The notes beneath the pieces are model-generated. The model worked only from the letters and a program-made list of their open reading frames with translations. It was not told the origin of the DNA and did not search any database. Of a DNA stretch of 8,284 nt, positions 1 to 8,284 are shown in pieces. Source of the stretch: Salpingoeca rosetta (taxonomy: Eukaryota > Protista > Choanoflagellata); the NCBI GenBank assembly GCA_033442325.1, contig JAWQFM010000039.1, positions 1 to 8,284 on the forward strand, written 5' to 3'. The position numbers were made by a program, and so were the translations under genes. Within the stretch, counting starts at the first letter, position 1. Each line of letters begins with the position of its first letter.

Positions 1-553
1 ATCATGCCCGACTGGTGTTACGACGGAGAGCTTCTGCAGCCCGTCCTCTAGCACCAGAACACAACGGGCACGCCTCTTACGGGCCTGTTGTCACGCTGAC
101 CACCCCAGAGGTGCAGCCTCTGGCTTCAGCGCATCACAGGCACACATCACACCACAACCTAACACTCGGCACGACTATTCCACAGCGATGGTCACTCAGC
201 CATGCCTGCTCTCTGCACGACGGCTACCGTTGCAACGCCCGTCCTCTGACAGATTGCAAACAGGCACGCCTCACACGGGCCCGCTGTGGTCACGCTGCCC
301 AACTCACGGGGCCAGCCTCTGACCTCAAGGCACCACAGGCACACACTCACACACATCAACACCACACGCACCACACACTTGGCATGACCATTCCTCAGCG
401 GTAGTCACCTTGCCTTGCCCGCTTTCTGCACGACGGTGAAACTCAGCACAGCCCGTCCTCTGACAGTCAGCACATGGGCGCGCCTCAAACGGGCCTGGGT
501 CACGTTGTTCACCCTCACAGGTGCAGCCTCTGACTTCAGCGCACCACAGGCAA
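1..553 (+). repeat. Degenerate tandem repeat, ~200-214 bp unit, ~2.7 copies visible (may extend left of the window)
   Basis: GCCCGTCCTCT at 39, 237 and 451 (spacing 198 and 214). Collinear blocks ACGACGG, CGCCTC, CGGGCC, GTCACG, CAGCCTCTG and GCAYCACAGGCA occur in each copy. Confidence 0.9.
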
Positions 554-810
554 CTCTCCCTCAGGGGACACCACTTGCACACAACTAACCCATGCGACCT
601 CCAACATGCGTCACACACCCCTGTCTGTCTATCAGCACTGTGCATGCGCTTCAGGCTCACACAGGCGTATGACTGACCGCTACCATGGGACGAATGCAGC
701 AAGAAAGCCAAGCAGGAGCAGCATCCTACGAACACACAACACCACATACAGTCACACATTCACGCACGTGTCTTTTGTTCATGACTGGCACTTGCCACAG
801 CCTTGCCAAT

Positions 811-819
811 GCGGGGGAG
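811..819 (+). other. Polypurine tract (PPT) of E1
   Basis: GCGGGGGAG directly followed by the TGTTG LTR start, as is typical for copia elements. Confidence 0.85.
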
Positions 820-1036
820 TGTTGACGAAAGACATTGGCGCCCCTGTGTCACTTTGTGGTTTATTCATGTTCGACTTGCTTTCTTGTTTTCGTCCACTTC
901 CTCTACAAAATTTCCTCTTGTGTTCACCCACCAATACAATGGTCGACAACGCACATGAGAGAACAGCAACCACACAGCACACAGCCACACCATCACAGAC
1001 ACACACACACGCATACAGCCAGTCCATGTCTTAACA
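820..1036 (+). repeat. 3' LTR of E1 (217 bp)
   Basis: Starts TGTT right after the PPT and ends AACA (inverted termini). Position 1037 corresponds to E3 6364 on the opposite strand, and that similarity stops exactly at 1036/1037. Confidence 0.85.
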
Positions 1037-4000
1037 GCGTCATCGTCGCAGCATAGAGGAGGGAGCCAAGCAGCTCGCGGAACGGCACGTCCGGGAGTGG
1101 CTCCTCCTTTGTCGGCTGGCTTGTCGACGTAGCCCGTGCAGAGCGGCGTGCCGACGGGCTTGCAGTCAGCCATGCCGAAGGTCTCCAGCACGCTGCGCAG
1201 GTAGTGCTCCTGGCTCATGGTGACGGTCCTGGCCTTGCGGTCGTGCTGCACCTTGATGCCGAGACAAATGTCTGGGCTGCCCAGGTCCTTCATCTTGAAG
1301 CGCTTGGAGATGGCCTTCTTGAACGCGGCCATGTCGCTGTCGCTGTCGGCGAAGATGAGCAGGTCGTCCACGTAGACGGCAACCCACATCACCTTGCCAC
1401 CCTTGCAGGTGCGGCGGTAGATGCAGGCGTCCGTGGCTGTGGCGATGAAGTCCTGCTCGCGCATCCAGGCGTCCAGCGTGTGGTTCCACAGGCGCGGGCT
1501 CTGCTTCAGGCCATACAACCCGCGCTTGAGGCGCAGGACCGTATTCGGCGAGAAGATGCCGTCGACGGCCGGTGGCTGGACGTAGATCTCGTGATCCACG
1601 GGCGCGTTGAGGAACGCCGTGTTGACGTCCATCTGCTGGATGTCCATGCCACGCGCGACGGCCATGGCGAGCATGGTGCGGATGGCTGCGATGGTAGCCG
1701 TCGGGGCAAAGGTGTCCGTGTAGTTGACACCGTGGACCTGGGAGTAGCCTTTGGCAACCCAGCGCGCCTTGTACTTGATCACCTTGCCCTGGTCGTCACG
1801 CTTCCTCCGAAAGATGACCATGCTGCGGAGCAGCTTGTGGCCCTTGGGAAGGTCAGCGCGAGGCACGACGTCGTAGACGTCATTGGCCTGCATTGCCGCA
1901 AACTCGTCCAGGATGGCTTGGCGCCACTCCTCAGAGTCTGGCGAGGCAAGCGCCTCCTTGACGGTGGCTGGCTCAGCTGACGTGGCAACACTGCCAACAG
2001 CGATGTCTGGTAGATGACCACCCACTGCTGATGTCTTCTCCCCCGTACCAGCAGCGCTGGTGGCAACGTGACACGTGGTGGTTGAGCCACCAGAGGTGTC
2101 CTTGTCGCCGAGGGTCTCGGACACCAGCAGCTGGTCCCAGACGGAGCCGCCAAGGGCGCGTGGCTGGAGCTGCGGCTCCCCCGCACGTGGTGCAGTGGGA
2201 GCGCCGGTGGCACTGTCCTCGGTTGAACGCTGAGCGGTCTTATTGGCATGCGAAGCAGAGGCACCGCTGTTGTGCTCTTGCTGCTGCTGAGAGGAGGCGG
2301 CGTCCTTGTTCTTGATGGCGCCGAAGCGAGCGTGGATGGTGTGGACAACGCGTCGCGTGTCCGGCATCCAGACGACGTGGGCCTGGTCCTCCTCGGCGAA
2401 GCCGACGTAGACGCCGACGCGTGAGCGTGGGTCAAGCTTGTGCCGCGTGCTGCTCTTCTCCACATGCACGTAGGTCGGCGAGCCGAAGACGCGCAACAGG
2501 CTGACGTCGAAGGGGTGCCCAGTCAGGGCCTCGAACGGTGACTTGTCCTTGAGGCTCCTGCGTGGCGCGATGTTGTGCAGCAGCGTGGCGTGCTGCACGG
2601 CGAAGCCCCAGAACGGCTTGTCCAGGTCCGCAGCAAACAGCATCGTGCGCGCCGTCTCAAAGAGGGTGCGGAAGGTGCGCTCCGCGGATCCGTTCTTGGC
2701 CTGCGAGTGCGGTGGCGAGAAGCGCTGCTTGATGTCGAAGGCCAGGCACAGGTCGGTGAAGTCCTGGCTCTTGAAGACGGCGTCGCTGTCCGTCTGCAGC
2801 GTGGCGCCTCGGAGCGCGTTGATGACGTGACGGTCCTTGCGCAGCTGCTCCAGGGCCGCACCGACGTCGTTCTTGTGCCGGATGAGAAACGTCCAGGCGA
2901 AACGCGTGCAGTCGTCGATGAAGGTCAGCGCGTAGCGTGCACCTCGCAGCGACGTCTCCTCCAGCGGACCGGCGATGTCGGCGTAGAGCAGCTGGCATGG
3001 CCCAGCGCTACGTGGAGCAGACTGCTTTGGGATGGAGGCGCGCGTGCTCTTGCCAAGCGCACATGGTCCACAGGTGACGATGTGCTTGGAAGAGGCCTGG
3101 GCGATCTGCTGCCGGATGGCGTCAACGGCCGCGCTGCTGCGATGGCCTAGCACGTCGTGTGCAGAGGCGCCCTCGTCAGCATCCTCGGCTTCCCCGTCGC
3201 TGCTGTGCACGAGCTCCCCCGCAAGCGCCGTGGCTTGTTGGGAGGTCGTGGTGCTGGCGTAGAGGAAGAGATGGCCGGTGTCCTTGGACGGCAGCAGAGG
3301 CACGCTCCATGTGGCAAACTGGATGCGGCTGTCGTCCGCAGCAATGACGACGGAAGCACCACGACGCGCGCGAGTCACCAGGTTCAGCGCCAGAAGGTTG
3401 TACTTGATATCGGGGACATGCAGCACGTTCTTGAGCGTGATGGTACCTGGAGCGCCGTCTGTGCCAGTCACGCGGAGCACGGCGTCGCCCTTGCCAATGA
3501 CCGTGACGGCCTGGCTGTTGGCAACGGTGACGTGCTGCGTGACGGCGATGTAGTTGGTGAGGAGGGAGGCGTCGCTGGTGATGTGCGCCGTGGCACCGCT
3601 GTCAGCGAGCCACAGCTGTGGTGGCACTGGTCCGATGGCGTGGCCCTCCTCGCCCTCGGGCTGCAGCATGAGGGCATCGTGGTGGATGGCGAAGGTCTCC
3701 ACGCGCTGAGGGCCGTGGCTGACGACGGCCGCCTTCTTGAATGGAGCTGCTCCTCCGTGCTGCGGGCGAGAGGATCCTGGCCGCTTGCCGTTGCCGTTGC
3801 CGTGGTTGCGAAGCGTAGCCAGGATCTGCCGCACGTCGATGACGTGATGCCGCTTGGCCGCCTGCAGCTTGCGGCACTGCTGCGCGCAGTGGCCGCGGAA
3901 GTTGCAGAACGCGCAAGTCACGCGCTCTGCAGGTGGACAGCATGGTCCACCGCTCGTGTCGGAGGGCGACGTGCCAGTGTGCATCGGCGATGCAGCGAAG

Positions 4001-4911
4001 GAGCCAGAGCCTGGCCCACCGATGGCGAGCACAGGCGTGCGCTTCTTGGGACGATGCAGGCGGCGCTCCTCCTGAATGAGGTCCGCAGTCATCTTGGACA
4101 GCGATGGCGGCGGGTCCTCGCGCTCCATGAACCGCATCGCCACATCAAACTCCGCGGGGAGTTCATTGCGGACGAGGGTGCGCAGGTCGTCCTCCGGGAT
4201 GGACACGCCGGCAGCAAGGAGCTGCGAGTTGATGTCCGTGATGCGGGACATGAACGTGTCGACGGTGTCCGTGGGCAACCAGGTGGTCGAGGAGAGCTGC
4301 TGCCTGAGACGACTGACGTGGTCCTTGCCGCTGCGGATGTAGCGCTCGCGGAGGCGGCGCAGCGCAAGCACACCGGAGCGGCCACGGTTGTCGGTGATGG
4401 CCAGCCGCAGCGGGTGTCCCGTCAGGACGCCAAGGAGGAACGCGAAGATGGCTGCGTCAACCTGTGGATCACGGGGATCCAGCAGGCCAGAGGCTCGGGA
4501 CGCCACCTGCGCTCCTCCGCTCGGAGTGGCGGAAGAAGGGAGAGAGGAAGAGGAGGAAGATGGCTGAGCGCCGTGGTCGTCGCCATCGCCCTCGTCGTCG
4601 TCATCGTCGTCGTGGTCCCCCGCGTCGTGGCGGACGCCAGTGCGGCGAGGGCCGCGTTGAGCGCGGGAGCGAGTGCGGGGACCCGAAGCACCGTGGGTGC
4701 TTGGGCTCGGCGATGAGGCAGCTGCTGGAGCCTGCCCGTCTCCTTGGTGGTCAGCACCACCCTCGGCGATGATGCCAGCGTCGATGCCAGCGGCGATGAG
4801 CTTGGCCTCGACGGTGATGAAGAAGAGGTTGGCATCCTGCTCAGCGCCAGCGAAGACCTTGATGCCGTCTGCGCTAATTGGACTGGGTCTCATAATCTGT
4901 TGTAAGTTCAT
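1037..4911 (-). pseudogene. Copia gag-pol polyprotein (Gag, CCHC knuckle, aspartic protease, integrase, reverse transcriptase); frameshifted at ~1109 and cut at 1037
   Basis: ATG at 4911 (MNLQQIMRP). Zinc knuckle CAFCNFRGHCAQQC 3915-3874. Protease WLADSGA ~3612-3592. Integrase HDVLGH...CGPC ~3159-3061 and D(2979),D(2790)-35-E(2682). KLDPRS motif. RT motifs YKARWVAKG, QMDVNTAFLN, LYGLKQSPR and YVDD (1374-1363). One extra base at 1108-1110 relative to E3. Confidence 0.95.
4882..4897 (-). other. Primer-binding site of E2 (GATTATGAGACCCAGT), half-tRNA-Met type
   Basis: Immediately follows the LTR terminal CAACA. Its complement TGGGT-CTCATAA-TC reads as a tRNA-Met(CAT) anticodon arm and resembles the Drosophila copia PBS GGTTATGGGCCCAG. 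Confidence 0.8.
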
Positions 4912-4935
4912 GGTGATGGTGCTGTTGTTGGAGAC

Positions 4936-4936
<1 letters not shown>

Positions 4937-4966
<30 letters not shown>
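4937..4966. repeat. (TG)15 microsatellite in the 3' part of the E2 LTR
   Basis: Seen directly; counterpart of (CA)14 at 7687-7714. Confidence 0.95.
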
Positions 4967-4969
<3 letters not shown>

Positions 4970-5120
4970 AGTGTGCTGTGTGTTGTGTGGGAGATTGTCT
5001 TGGCAAGGGGAAGTTGTGTGTGTTTACTTGAGTTGTGAAGCAAACAAGGATGTAGGATGAATGAACATGAACTGAGAGACACTCTCACACATAGACAGAA
5101 AACTGGAGGAGAGAGAGAAG

Positions 5121-5205
5121 TGCCACGTGGCAAAACAACCAGAAACGCCCGTTTCTGGGCGCACGTGCACAGAAACGTTTACAGCAGAATTTGCTGACTC
5201 AGCAA
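5121..5205 (-). promoter_or_regulatory. Putative U3 enhancer of E2: TGCTGAGTCAGCA (AP-1 core/MARE-like), GCACGTGC (E-box), TGCCACGTGGCA (G-box/CREB3-like)
   Basis: Motifs at 5192-5204, 5161-5168 and 5121-5132; the same order recurs in the E3 U3. Function is inferred from consensus similarity only. Confidence 0.55.
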
Positions 5206-5235
5206 GCATTGACACTGGAACAGTGATGTCAACAC

Positions 5236-7077
5236 CAGCCACGCGCCCTTGGCGGTTCCGTCTGGGACCAGCTGCTGTTGTCCGAGACCCTCGGCGACAA
5301 GGACACCTCTGGTGGCTCAACCACCACGTGTCATGTTGCCACCAGCGCTGCTGGTACGGGGGAGAAGACATCAGCAGTGGGTGGTCATCTACCAGACATC
5401 GCTGCTGGCAGTGTTGCCACGTCAGCTGAGCCAGCCACCGTCAAGGAGGCGCTTGCCTCGCCAGACTCCGAGGAGTGGCGCCAAGCCATCCTGGACGAGT
5501 TTGCGGCAATGCAGGCCAATGACGTCTACGACGTCGTGCCTCGCGCTGACCTTCCCAAGGGCCACAAGCTGCTCCGCAGCATGGTCATCTTTCGGAGGAA
5601 GCGCGATGACCAGGGCAAGGTGATCAAGTACAAGGCGCGCTGGGTTGCCAAAGGCTACTCCCAGGTCCACGGTGTCAACTACACGGACACCTTTGCCCCG
5701 ACGGCTACCATCGCAGCCATCCGCACCATGCTCGCCATGGCCGTCGCGCGTGGCATGGACATCCAGCAGATGGACGTCAACACGGCGTTCCTCAACGCGC
5801 CCGTGGATCACGAGATCTACGTCCAGCCACCGGCCGTCGACGGCATCTTCTCGCCGAATACGGTGCTGCGCCTCAAGCGTGGGCTGTATGGGCTGAAGCA
5901 GAGCCCGCGCCTGTGGAACCACACGCTGGACGCCTGGATGCGCGAGCAGGACTTCGTCGCCACAGCCACGGACGCCTGCATCTACCGCCGCACCTGCAAG
6001 GGTGGCAAAGTGATGTGGGTTGCCGTCTACGTGGACGACCTGCTCATCTTCGCCGACAGCGACAGCGACATGGCCGCGTTCAAGAAGGCCATCTCCAAGC
6101 GCTTCAAGATGAAGGACCTGGGCAGCCCAGACATATGTCTCGGCATCAAGGTGCAGCACAACCGCAAGGCCAGGACCGTCACCATGAGCCAGGAGCACTA
6201 CCTGCGCAACGTGCTGGAGAGCTTCGGCATGGCTGACTGCAAGCCTGTCGGCACGCCGCTCTGCACGGGCTACGTCGACAAGCCAGCCGACAAGGAGGAG
6301 CCACTCCCGGACGTGCCGTTCCGCGAGCTGCTTGGCTCCCTCCTCTATGCTGCGACGATGACGCGCCCAGACATCTCAGCGGCTGTCTCCATCCTGTCTC
6401 GCCGTATGCAGCACTTCGGCATGGACCATTGGAAGGCTGCCAAGCACCTTCTTCGCTACATCAAGGGCACCTTGTCCTACACCATCAAGTACGCCGCCAC
6501 TGGCGACACCAGCAACGGCAGCACTGCCGACGGCGTGCTCTCAGCGTACTCGGATGCGTCGTTCGCCTCCGACGTTGACACGCGACGTTCCCGCACGGGC
6601 TTCGTCGTCTTCTGTTCCACGGGCCCCGTGTCCTGGAACTCCAAGCTGCAGGCCACCGTGGCCACAGCCTCCGCCGACGCGGAGTACATGGCTCTCGCAG
6701 CCACCGCACAGGAACTCATGTTCCTTCGCCAACTCCAGGAGGAGCTCACCGGCGCCGTCCTGTGCGAGCCCACGCTCGTCCACACGGACAACCAGCCGGC
6801 GCAGCGCGTTGCCGAACACGCCGCCTCGCGCATGCGGCACATCCTCGTCAAGTACCACTACATCCGCGAGTGCGTCGACACAAAGAGGATTGTGCTGAGC
6901 TACCTCGCCACGGAGCATATGATCGCAGATCTTCTCACGAAGATCCTCCCTCGGCCCAAGACGGCTCAGTTCTGCACGATGCTGTTCGACCAGCGTCCTC
7001 TGCCAGGCTGCCAGCCACGGGCCCGTCCTCATTCGGGCCGGTCGCCACGTCCTTCGACTCCGCGTCAGGACCTCTGA
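5236..7077 (+). pseudogene. 3' part of copia pol: reverse transcriptase + RNase H (frame open, 5' part displaced by the E2 insertion)
   Basis: Frame begins QPRALGGSVWDQLL at 5236 with no native start. RT YVDD at 6028-6039. TRPDIS tether. RNase H acidic residues in YSDASF, AEYMA, TDNQ and ADLLTK. TGA at 7075-7077. Confidence 0.95.
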
Positions 7078-7291
7078 GCGGCCGCGCACCACAGGACACG
7101 CCTTCACTCGGGCCAGCCTTCCACAACAGGCTGCGCACCACAGGCACCAACCATTTTCTTAAACGTGTTCCACAACACACGTCCTTACTCGCATCTCACC
7201 TACCTCTGCCCATGCCATTCCTACATGCATGACATCACCATCACCATCAATCACGTTTCAGAACGTCAACGCAGCAGAGAGGTAGGTCAAT

Positions 7292-7300
7292 GCGGGGGAG
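7292..7300 (+). other. Polypurine tract (PPT) of E3
   Basis: GCGGGGGAG directly before TGTTGACA, about 215 bp downstream of the pol stop. Confidence 0.9.
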
Positions 7301-7321
7301 TGTTGACAGGCAAGTCCTGCC

Positions 7322-7522
7322 TGCTGAGTCATCATTGACCTCCTTTCTTCACGACACCACAAATTTGCATTCACCTCTCTTGTGTTCTGGAATGTTCACG
7401 TGATTTCCCTCCAACCTGTTGCACGTGCAGTGTTTAGCTTGTGTGGTTGCTCGATGTTACATGCTCTTGCATGACACACCACATAACCACACACACAACT
7501 CTCAACAAACACTGCCACGTCA
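7322..7522 (+). promoter_or_regulatory. Putative U3 enhancer of E3: TGCTGAGTCAT, TCACGTGA, TGCACGTGCA, TGCCACGTCA
   Basis: Motifs at 7322-7332, 7396-7403, 7420-7429 and 7513-7522; bZIP/bHLH consensus-like. Confidence 0.55.
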
Positions 7523-7660
7523 CCACTTTGCGTTGTCGACAATTCTTGTCTTGTGTTCTGTTTCTTTCTGTTGGAGTGTTCATTCATCCTACATCCTTGT
7601 TTGCTTCACAACTCAAGTAAACACACACAACTCTCTCTTGCCAAGACAATCTCCCACACA

Positions 7661-7682
7661 ACACACAGCACACACAGCACAC

Positions 7683-7714
<32 letters not shown>
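7661..7714 (+). repeat. (ACACACAGC)3 plus (CA)14 simple repeats in the E3 LTR
   Basis: Seen directly. Confidence 0.92.
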
Positions 7715-7753
7715 AGTCTCCAACAACAGCACCACCACCATGAACTTGCAACA

Positions 7754-8248
7754 TCCACGCTCTCAGGCTACCCCCTTCTCCTCTTCACCAACGGAGAAGC
7801 AGACGTCAACGCCGGCCAAGGATGGGCCCGGCTCAAGGACCACTACGCTTCGCAGGACCGCCTCCGCATCGCAGAGCTCAAGGAGGCGCAGCTTCACGTC
7901 CCCTGCGGCAACCTCGCCCGCTTCTTCGAGCGACACATGGAGCTGCAGCAGCAGTTGCAGGACGCAGGCGTGCGCCAGGACAACGAGGACCTCTTCACCA
8001 TCGTCTGGAAGCAGCTGCCACGCTGGACAGCCCCGCTCACGCTTCCCTACTTTGCCAGTGGCCGCTTTCCCTCCCTCCTCGAGCTCAGCATCAGGCTGCA
8101 GCAGCTGGAGCAGCAGATGCGTGGTTCACGCACACAGCCGCAGGCAGGCGGCTTCATGGCAAGCGCACCGGCACGCAGAGGTGGAAGACGCGGCTTCTCA
8201 ACAGCAGCAACAACCACGGACGCCAGGGGAGGCAACAACGGGAGGTAA
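7754..8248 (+). pseudogene. Copia Gag fragment (UBN2/Retrotran_gag_2-like), 5'-interrupted
   Basis: Aligns by eye to E2 Gag: STLSGYPLLL~GVLTGHPLRL, WARLKDHY~LRRLRERY, QLQDAGVRQDNEDL~QLLAAGVSIPEDDL, QLP~ELP, FPSL~PPSL, LQQLEQQM~LIQEERRL. TAA at 8246-8248. Confidence 0.8.
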
Positions 8249-8284
8249 CGGCAACAGCTAACAGCAAGGGGCGCCGCTTGCGGC
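7754..8284 (+). mobile_element. E4: fragment of a divergent copia element, host of the E3 insertion; continues beyond the window
   Basis: Gag-like coding sequence starts immediately after the E3 LTR terminus. No nucleotide similarity to E2 gag is evident, but there is protein-level similarity. Confidence 0.75.

What the first reader, a model, noticed from the sequence alone, without database searches (positions are those of the whole stretch)
1..8284. Four-level nest of copia elements, each inserted in the coding region of the previous one
Seen: three junctions (1036/1037, 5234/5235, 7753/7754) each fall exactly on an LTR terminal AACA, with interrupted copia coding sequence on the other side. 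This gives the age order E4 (oldest), E3, E2, E1 (youngest), with orientations +,+,-,+. No non-TE DNA is present. Established: some LTR elements target silent chromatin (yeast Ty5 via Sir4) and form nested clusters. Inference: these families may home to copia-containing chromatin (centromeric or heterochromatic island, or a TE-trap locus). E2 and E3 differ by only ~2% in pol and E3's frame is still open, so at least the last rounds look recent.
Basis: partly seen in the sequence, partly recalled or inferred. Interest (0 to 1): 0.75.

Follow-up and report, generated by a model that had tools for sequence, protein, structure and literature searches.

The report
Nested copia retrotransposons, Salpingoeca rosetta scaffold
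The window is an entire small unplaced scaffold of the choanoflagellate Salpingoeca rosetta, made only of four copia-type retrotransposon fragments inserted one into another; three belong to families published in 2019, so this is an ordinary though unusually deep transposon nest, not a new kind of element.

Summary
The junctions at 1036/1037, 5234/5235 and 7753/7754 each join the last base of an LTR (…AACA) to interrupted copia coding sequence. In each case an uninterrupted reference shows the break is exact.

The organism is Salpingoeca rosetta, and the window is a whole 8,284-bp scaffold, so the "upstream flank" does not exist in this record.

- **E4** is Srospv2, cut in gag at codon 87/88.
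- **E3** is Srospv3 with a B-type LTR of 453 bp.
- **E2** is Srospv3 with an A-type LTR of 337 bp, on the minus strand.
- **E1** is a related element whose 216-bp LTR matches none of the 13 LTR families of Southworth et al. 2019.

That paper's read-derived LTR catalogue holds both a 5′ and a 3′ A-type LTR flanked by GCTGG. This supports the predicted 5-bp duplication for E2. It holds no partner for E3 and nothing for E1.

The nest looks young. However, 12 of the 18 substitutions between E2 and E3 are synonymous, so that 1.7% difference is lineage divergence, not age.

Purifying selection in a compact genome explains the nest equally well. The links across 4.2 and 2.5 kb of high-copy repeat could be assembly artefacts. 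Interest is low to moderate.

The parts
1..820 (+). E1 internal 3' region. It is non-coding and C-rich, holds three diverged tandem units of about 200-214 bp (about 30-231, 232-445, 446-660), and ends in the polypurine tract GCGGGGGAG (812-820).
   Evidence: Repeat families D1, D3 and D4 and the self-BLAST show the units. The units align to a single-copy stretch of E3 at 6990-7150. No Pfam hit was found on the four ORFs tested, and no tblastn hit better than E=0.04 for any of 52 copia proteins across 1-1036. Positions 807-826 are identical to 7288-7307.
821..1036 (+). E1 3' LTR, 216 bp, TGTTGAC...TTAACA. This LTR type is absent from the published S. rosetta family set.
   Evidence: Boundaries come from the polypurine tract/TGTT start and from junction J1. 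Twelve motifs of 12-18 nt were absent from all supplementary files of Southworth et al..
1037..4897 (-). E2 (Srospv3) internal region: a primer-binding-site-like sequence (PBS-like) at 4883-4897, then gag-protease-integrase-RT. It is cut by E1 after reference position 4308 (GACGC) and has a 1-bp frameshift at 1108-1110.
   Evidence: Pfam domains. It is 95-98% identical to S. rosetta proteins. There are no stops from 4911 down to 1112 and GC3 is 0.806, against 0.805 published for Srospv3. The frameshift is shown.
4898..5234 (-). E2 5' LTR, 337 bp, Srospv3A type. The gag-pol ATG lies at 4911, inside the LTR.
   Evidence: It matches the entry '5_GCTGG' of the published Srospv3 LTR alignment. Only the last 177 bp align to E3's LTR, at 92%, as published for subfamilies A and B.
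5235..7300 (+). E3 (Srospv3) internal region, starting at reference position 3179 in the integrase-RT linker. It holds RT and RNase H, the pol stop at 7075-7077, a 3' UTR and the polypurine tract at 7292-7300.
   Evidence: RVT_2 at E=1.7e-61 and an open frame 5236-7077. Comparison with the published Srospv3 sequence.
7301..7753 (+). E3 3' LTR, 453 bp, Srospv3B type, with a (CA)n tract at 7655-7714.
   Evidence: It shares the three diagnostic variants of the published entry '3_TCCAC'. Tandem Repeats Finder.
7754..8284 (+). E4 (Srospv2) gag fragment from reference position 936 (gag codon 87/88) onward. The last ~85 bases are degraded.
   Evidence: By eye it differs from the published Srospv2 sequence at 1 base over the first ~445 bases, then at several mismatches and indels. 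BLASTP to E2 gag gives E=1e-7.

Best explanation
The window is a complete, unplaced, all-repeat scaffold of the Salpingoeca rosetta assembly. It holds the right-hand half of a nest built by three successive integrase-mediated insertions.

1. A Srospv3 copy with a B-type LTR (E3) inserted into the gag of a Srospv2 copy (E4).
2. A Srospv3 copy with an A-type LTR (E2), in reverse orientation, inserted into the integrase-RT linker of E3.
3. A Srospv3-related element with an uncatalogued 216-bp LTR (E1) inserted just after the RT domain of E2.

Shown: the junctions, the element identities, the orientations and the insertion order.

Inferred: the nest exists because the two most abundant and active LTR families of this compact genome keep inserting, and insertions into already dead transposon copies cost the host nothing and so persist. 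Some chromatin bias of integration may add to this. It is an ordinary nested LTR-retrotransposon cluster with no function of its own.
For: Organism and scaffold:
- The best protein hits are S. rosetta gene models at 87-98% identity.
- PTSG_13190 (P0014) sits on a contig of exactly 8,284 bp. It maps at 99.8-100% to 5347-7044 and 7766-8245.

Junctions: all three fall on LTR termini and match uninterrupted references.

Family identity:
- The LTRs of 337 and 453 bp share only their last 177 bp. This is the published Srospv3A/B pattern.
- GC3 is 0.81-0.82 for E2 and E3 and 0.79 for E4, against published values of 0.805 and 0.784.
- E4 differs from the Srospv2 reference at 1 base in ~445.

Target-site duplication: a 5-bp duplication is published for all copia-like families. 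Both '5_GCTGG' and '3_GCTGG' A-type LTRs are in the published read-derived alignment.

Activity: Srospv3 has 121 copies and Srospv2 has 71. They are by far the most abundant families, and both are reported active.

Transposons next to transposons elsewhere: P0003 and P0008 each hold two copia RT stretches. P0009 holds a second family's RNase H next to Srospv3 gag. P0015 joins Srospv3 gag to a Ty3/gypsy pol. All four lie on scaffolds of 0.8-2.5 Mb.
Against:
- The catalogue holds no 5' LTR with a TCCAC flank for E3 and nothing for E1.
- J1 to J2 (4.2 kb) and J2 to J3 (2.5 kb) are linked only through high-copy repeat in a Sanger-era assembly. Southworth et al. say that assembly failed to yield full-length elements.
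- A rough estimate of my own from published copy numbers, assuming a genome of about 55 Mb (from memory), puts LTR elements at about 2% of the genome. A four-deep nest is then very unlikely under uniform, unselected insertion. Some bias must exist, and I cannot say whether it acts on insertion or on retention.
Confidence: 0.65

Rival explanations
1. Active targeting. The integrases of Srospv2/3-type elements are tethered to the chromatin that covers existing LTR elements, in the way Ty5 is tethered by Sir4. New copies would then land preferentially inside old ones.
For: - The depth of the nest is improbable under uniform insertion into a genome with about 2% LTR elements (my estimate from the copy numbers).
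- H3K27me3 is reported over and around Srospv2/3 copies and at subtelomeres.
- Four of 14 other Srospv3-bearing gene models also contain a second LTR-element family.
Against: - Pfam at E<=10 finds no chromodomain or other recognisable targeting module in the 1,285-residue E2 polyprotein.
- The three target sites share no motif.
- The gene-model sample is biased towards long, fused models.
- Purifying selection in a gene-dense genome predicts the same pattern.
- The papers read here report no targeting.
Confidence: 0.15
2. Assembly chimera. Each junction is a real insertion somewhere in the genome, but the assembler threaded junctions from different Srospv3 copies through collapsed near-identical internal sequence. 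The true structures would then be shallower nests.
For: - The record is a whole 8.3-kb unplaced scaffold made only of repeats.
- The published survey could not recover full-length elements from this assembly and had to rebuild them from trace reads.
- The last ~85 bases look like low-quality read ends.
- E2's frameshift is a homopolymer-length difference.
Against: - Junctions fall on exact LTR termini, not inside shared repeat, so none is itself a join artefact.
- E2's A-type 5' LTR with flank GCTGG has a partner 3' LTR in the reads, as expected for a complete element sitting inside another Srospv3 copy.
- The window shows no internal inconsistency.
Confidence: 0.2

Closest known systems
Srospv3 (subfamilies A and B) and Srospv2, copia-like LTR retrotransposons of S. 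rosetta (Southworth et al. 2019, PMC6875170)
   Same: E2, E3 and E4 are copies of these families. They share the LTR termini TGTT...AACA, the PBS-like sequence GATTATGAGACCCAG and a gag-pol ORF that starts inside the 5' LTR. They also share the (CA)n tract in the LTR and a GC3 of about 0.8. The individual LTRs appear in the paper's alignments as 5_GCTGG and 3_TCCAC.
   Different: The paper reports no genomic distribution or nesting of copies. E1's 216-bp LTR and its triplicated 3' unit are not among the 13 LTR families described.
Nested LTR-retrotransposon clusters of maize intergenic regions and plant or fly pericentromeres (from my own knowledge, not checked here)
   Same: Successive insertions of young elements into older ones, with LTR termini abutting interrupted coding sequence. 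The insertion order can be read from the nesting.
   Different: Those genomes are largely transposon sequence, so nesting is expected by chance. By my rough estimate LTR elements make up only about 2% of this genome, so a four-deep nest implies a stronger insertion or retention bias.
Ty5 targeting to silent chromatin through Sir4, and the Ty1/Ty2 hybrid LTRs of yeast (the Ty1/2 parallel is drawn in PMC6875170; Ty5/Sir4 is from my own knowledge)
   Same: The A and B subfamilies share the 3' half of the LTR but not the 5' half, as Ty1 and Ty1/2 hybrids do. Nesting in repressed chromatin is what Ty5-like tethering would give.
   Different: No targeting motif or partner is known or detectable here, and no integration-site data exist.

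Membership tests
Ty1/copia (Pseudoviridae) LTR retrotransposon | Domain order gag - protease - integrase - RT - RNase H, with integrase before RT | tested here: met
   In E2 the order is Retrotran_gag_2 at 180-282, Pol_BBD at 428-507, rve at 636-730, SH3_retrovirus at 791-857 and RVT_2 at 1004-1251. E3 continues through RVT_2 and the RNase H region.
Ty1/copia (Pseudoviridae) LTR retrotransposon | LTRs with TG...CA termini, a primer-binding site after the 5' LTR and a polypurine tract before the 3' LTR | tested here: met
   All three LTRs have TGTT...AACA termini. GATTATGAGACCCAG follows the E2 LTR, and GCGGGGGAG precedes the E1 and E3 LTRs. That the sequence after the E2 LTR pairs with the anticodon arm of a tRNA-Met is inference only.
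Ty1/copia (Pseudoviridae) LTR retrotransposon | 5-bp target-site duplication | tested here: inconclusive
   Only one side of each insertion is in the window. Published data give 5-bp duplications for all copia-like families and list both 5_GCTGG and 3_GCTGG LTRs. No partner is listed for E3 and nothing for E1.
Srospv3 (E2, E3) | At least 80% identity to the family reference (the 80-80-80 rule applied to LTRs in the paper), with A and B types sharing only the 3' ~166 bp of the LTR | tested here: met
   E2's LTR matches the A-type entries and E3's LTR matches the B-type entries of the published alignment. E2 and E3 LTRs share the last 177 bp at 92%. The polyprotein is 95-98% identical to S. rosetta copies and closely matches the published Srospv3 protein by eye.
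Srospv2 (E4) | Sequence identity to the Srospv2 reference | tested here: met
   The window from 7754 onward corresponds to reference positions 936 onward, with one substitution over the first ~445 bases. I compared it by eye with the printed sequence, not by a computed alignment.
Srospv3 or any other of the 13 published LTR families (E1) | LTR similarity to a published family | tested here: not met
   Twelve E1 motifs of 12-18 nt are absent from all supplementary sequences and alignments. Only the 20-nt polypurine tract/LTR start and the CA-rich end resemble Srospv3. Exact-word search would miss a copy diverged by more than about 10%.
Chromatin-targeted LTR elements (Ty5-like elements, chromoviruses) | A recognisable targeting module in integrase (a chromodomain or a defined tethering motif) | tested here: not met
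   Pfam finds no chromodomain in E2 at E<=10. A short Ty5-like motif could not be tested with these tools.

The most novel reading that the evidence does not exclude
[quoted passage not shown] This would be a tethered 'safe-haven' strategy like that of Ty5, evolved in a compact protist genome. The uncatalogued E1 type would be a further active member of that guild.
Probability: 0.12. Interest if true: 0.6.

Novelty: new member of a known kind. Interest (0 to 1): 0.25.

Why it matters
It matters little for transposon biology in general. Nested LTR elements are a textbook pattern, and three of the four elements belong to published families.

It is of modest use to people working on S. rosetta:
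- It flags PTSG_13190 and several other annotated genes as fusions of transposon fragments.
- It points to an LTR type missing from the published transposon library that later chromatin work relied on.
- It suggests that the two abundant copia families pile up on each other in a genome with few transposons. This could be tested against the published H3K27me3 maps and a long-read assembly.

Tried and rejected
- **Autointegration of one cDNA into itself**, as an explanation for the inverted E2/E3 junction. Rejected: both copies carry the same 1,131-bp pol segment, differ at 19 positions and have different LTR types.
- **E1 as a solo LTR.** Rejected: the flanks GGGAG and GCGTC do not match, and a polypurine tract identical to that of Srospv3 abuts the LTR start.
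- **E1 bases 1-820 as coding or host sequence.** There are no Pfam or tblastn hits, and its repeat unit is homologous to the end of Srospv3.
- **Rfam.** Nothing in the window.
- **Metagenome scan for the E1 LTR start.** No match.
No other S. rosetta locus could be read, so the complementary half of the nest and any genome-wide count were out of reach.
I repeated it only for the stop-free ORFs.
- **Phrase searches of the supplement** for LTR label plus sequence returned nothing. Separate label searches worked.
- **The large representative-protein search and structure prediction** were not used. The families were already identified.
Full report
**What is in the window.** The sequence is 62% G+C with strongly skewed strands.

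- It carries a 1,422-codon open frame on the minus strand (865-5133) and a 599-codon frame on the plus strand (5278-7077).
- Pfam places copia-type gag, the Pol beta-barrel (protease region), integrase core, the retroviral SH3-like domain and RVT_2 on the minus-strand frame, in that order. It places RVT_2 on the plus-strand frame.
- Self-comparison shows that 1037-2167 is the reverse complement of 5235-6364 at 98.3% identity, with one gap. It also shows that 4898-5067 matches 7577-7753 at 92%.
- No Rfam family matches.

**The three junctions.**

- At 1036|1037 an LTR ending ...CCATGTCTTAACA abuts GCGTCATCG.... The sister copy E3 reads straight through this site (…GATGACGC|GCCCAGAC), whereas in E2 the reverse complement of E1's LTR end follows (…GATGACGC|TGTTAAGAC).
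- At 5234|5235 the minus-strand LTR start (TGTTGACATCAC... on its own strand) abuts CCAGCCACGCG. E2's own intact copy of that site reads GCAGCT-CCAGCCACGCG.
- At 7753|7754 an LTR ending ...GAACTTGCAACA abuts TCCACGCTCTCAGG. The published Srospv2 sequence reads CATCGCG-TCCACGCTCTCAGG.

Each break is therefore exact to the base and falls on an LTR terminus. That is the signature of integration, not of recombination inside shared sequence.

The LTRs are 821-1036 (216 bp), 4898-5234 (337 bp, minus strand) and 7301-7753 (453 bp). A polypurine run GCGGGGGAG precedes the two plus-strand LTRs, and 807-826 is identical to 7288-7307. GATTATGAGACCCAG follows the minus-strand LTR.

**Whose genome.** The word search returned Salpingoeca rosetta gene models at 87-98% identity.

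- One of them, PTSG_13190 (P0014), lies on a contig of exactly 8,284 bp. It maps to 5347-7044 at 99.8% and to 7766-8245 at 100%.
- PTSG_13190 is a spliced fusion of E3 pol to E4 gag, so it is an annotation artefact.

**Which families.** Southworth et al. 2019 (PMC6875170) describe 13 LTR families in this genome. Six are copia-like (Srospv1-6), and all of those make 5-bp target duplications.

- Srospv3 (121 copies) falls into subfamilies A and B. Their LTRs share about 166 bp at the 3' end but only about 41% identity upstream. E2 and E3 show exactly this pattern.
- E2's LTR matches the A-type entry '5_GCTGG' of their LTR alignment. GCTGG is the reverse complement of CCAGC at 5235-5239.
- E3's LTR shares three diagnostic variants with their B-type entry '3_TCCAC'.
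- By eye, E4 differs from their Srospv2 sequence at one base from reference position 936 over about 445 bases.
- GC3 is 0.806 for E2, 0.821 for E3 and 0.792 for E4, against published values of 0.805 and 0.784.

On the published coordinates the insertions lie at three sites:
- Srospv2 936-940, which is gag codon 87/88.
- Srospv3 3179-3183, in the integrase-RT linker.
- Srospv3 4304-4308, about 40 codons after RVT_2, at the TRPD motif.

**E1.** This is the least secure piece.

- Bases 1-820 have no coding signal. Four ORFs give no Pfam hit, and 52 copia proteins give nothing better than E=0.04.
- The region holds three diverged tandem units of about 200-214 bp. These align with a single-copy stretch at the end of pol and the 3' UTR of Srospv3.
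- Together with the identical polypurine tract/LTR start, this makes E1 the 3' end of a Srospv3-related element.
- Its LTR matches nothing published. Twelve motifs of 12-18 nt are absent from the paper's sequences and alignments. A metagenome scan also found nothing.
- An exact-word search would miss a copy more than about 10% diverged, so 'uncatalogued' is likely but not proven.

**Target duplications.** Only one flank of each insertion is present in the window.

- The published alignment, which was built from Sanger trace reads and labelled by flanking 5-mers, contains both '5_GCTGG' and '3_GCTGG', and both are A-type. An A-type element bounded by GCTGG on both sides was therefore recovered.
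- With some tens of A-type entries and 1,024 possible 5-mers, a chance namesake is unlikely. I estimate a few percent.
- No '5_TCCAC' occurs among the Srospv3 entries, and no label GCGTC or GACGC exists anywhere.
- One of the three predictions is thus supported, and two remain open.

**Age.** It is not a clock.

- Of the 18 substitutions, 12 are synonymous and 6 are not. The binomial p is 5e-4 against a neutral share of about 27% synonymous, a figure I assumed.
- The difference therefore arose while both lineages were under selection, that is, between subfamilies.

Recency is nonetheless plausible on other grounds:
- E4 differs from its reference at 1 base in ~445.
- E3 has no internal stop in 613 codons.
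- E2 is open for 1,266 codons. Its only defect is one extra base in an A/T run at 1108-1110. That extra base is absent from E3, from the published reference and from the other S. rosetta proteins that span this site.
- The extra base, and the degraded last ~85 bases of the window, could equally be sequencing errors.

**How the nest arose.**

Shown: three integrations in the order E3 into E4, E2 into E3, E1 into E2.

Inferred: why they stack.

- From the published copy numbers and an assumed genome of about 55 Mb (a figure from memory), LTR elements make up about 2% of the genome. This is my own rough sum.
- Under uniform, unselected insertion I would expect a few copia-in-copia pairs but far less than one four-level nest.
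- Some bias therefore exists. In a gene-dense genome most insertions are probably removed by selection, and dead transposon copies are among the few harmless targets. That alone can produce stacking.
- Integration bias towards repressed chromatin is the alternative. H3K27me3 is reported over and around Srospv2/3 copies and at subtelomeres.
- Against targeting, Pfam finds no chromodomain or other targeting module in the polyprotein.
- Four of the 14 other Srospv3-bearing gene models also contain a second LTR-element family (P0003, P0008, P0009, P0015). This suggests that stacking is common. However, that sample favours long fused models.

**Caveat on the chain.** Each junction is sound on its own.

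- J1-J2 and J2-J3 are connected through 4.2 and 2.5 kb of sequence present in dozens of near-identical copies.
- The published survey notes that this assembly did not yield full-length elements.

**Verdict.** The nesting order and rough recency are supported. Targeting is untested, and the dating argument is wrong. The elements belong to published families apart from E1, and the phenomenon is a known kind.

Noticed in passing
window 4883-4911 (minus strand): The gag-pol ORF of E2 starts at an ATG 14 nt before the end of the 5' LTR and is translated through the PBS-like GATTATGAGACCCAG, giving MNLQQIMRP.... The second ATG lies where a Met anticodon (CAU) would pair. The published Srospv3 (CDS 432, LTR 1-445) and Srospv1 (CDS 380, LTR 1-387) have the same layout, and Srospv2 has the same PBS-like sequence. 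Pairing with the anticodon arm of a tRNA-Met is my inference; no S. rosetta tRNA was available.
   Followed up: partly
window 30-660: Three diverged tandem copies (73-80% identity, period 199-214 bp) of a unit that is single-copy at the pol end/3' UTR of Srospv3 (window 6990-7150). This expands E1's non-coding 3' region to more than 800 bp.
   Followed up: partly
window 5347-7044 and 7766-8245: The annotated gene PTSG_13190 splices E3 pol to E4 gag across the E3 3' UTR and LTR. It is a fusion of two transposon fragments, not a host gene.
   Followed up: yes
window 1108-1110: E2 has one extra base in an A/T run (GACAAAGGAGG against GACAAGGAGG in E3 and in the published reference). This shifts the pol frame 72 bp before the E1 junction. 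It may be a real mutation or a homopolymer sequencing error.
   Followed up: yes
window about 8200-8284: The last ~85 bases differ from the Srospv2 reference by several mismatches and indels and create a stop at 8249. The preceding ~445 bases differ at one position. This looks like a low-quality contig end (compared by eye).
   Followed up: partly
P0003, P0008, P0009, P0015 (S. rosetta scaffolds of 0.8-2.5 Mb): These gene models combine Srospv3 segments with a second copia RT or RNase H, or with a Ty3/gypsy pol. This indicates further transposon-next-to-transposon arrangements elsewhere in the genome.
   Followed up: partly
P0010, P0012 (ENA assemblies), P0013 (GOS marine metagenome): These are full-length copia polyproteins 48-65% identical to Srospv3 from environmental assemblies. 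They presumably come from uncultured choanoflagellates.
   Followed up: no
window 3157-4716 (+), and other long antisense ORFs: There are long open frames antisense to E2, including one of 519 codons, with no Pfam hit. They are the expected by-product of GC3 of about 0.8, not genes.
   Followed up: partly
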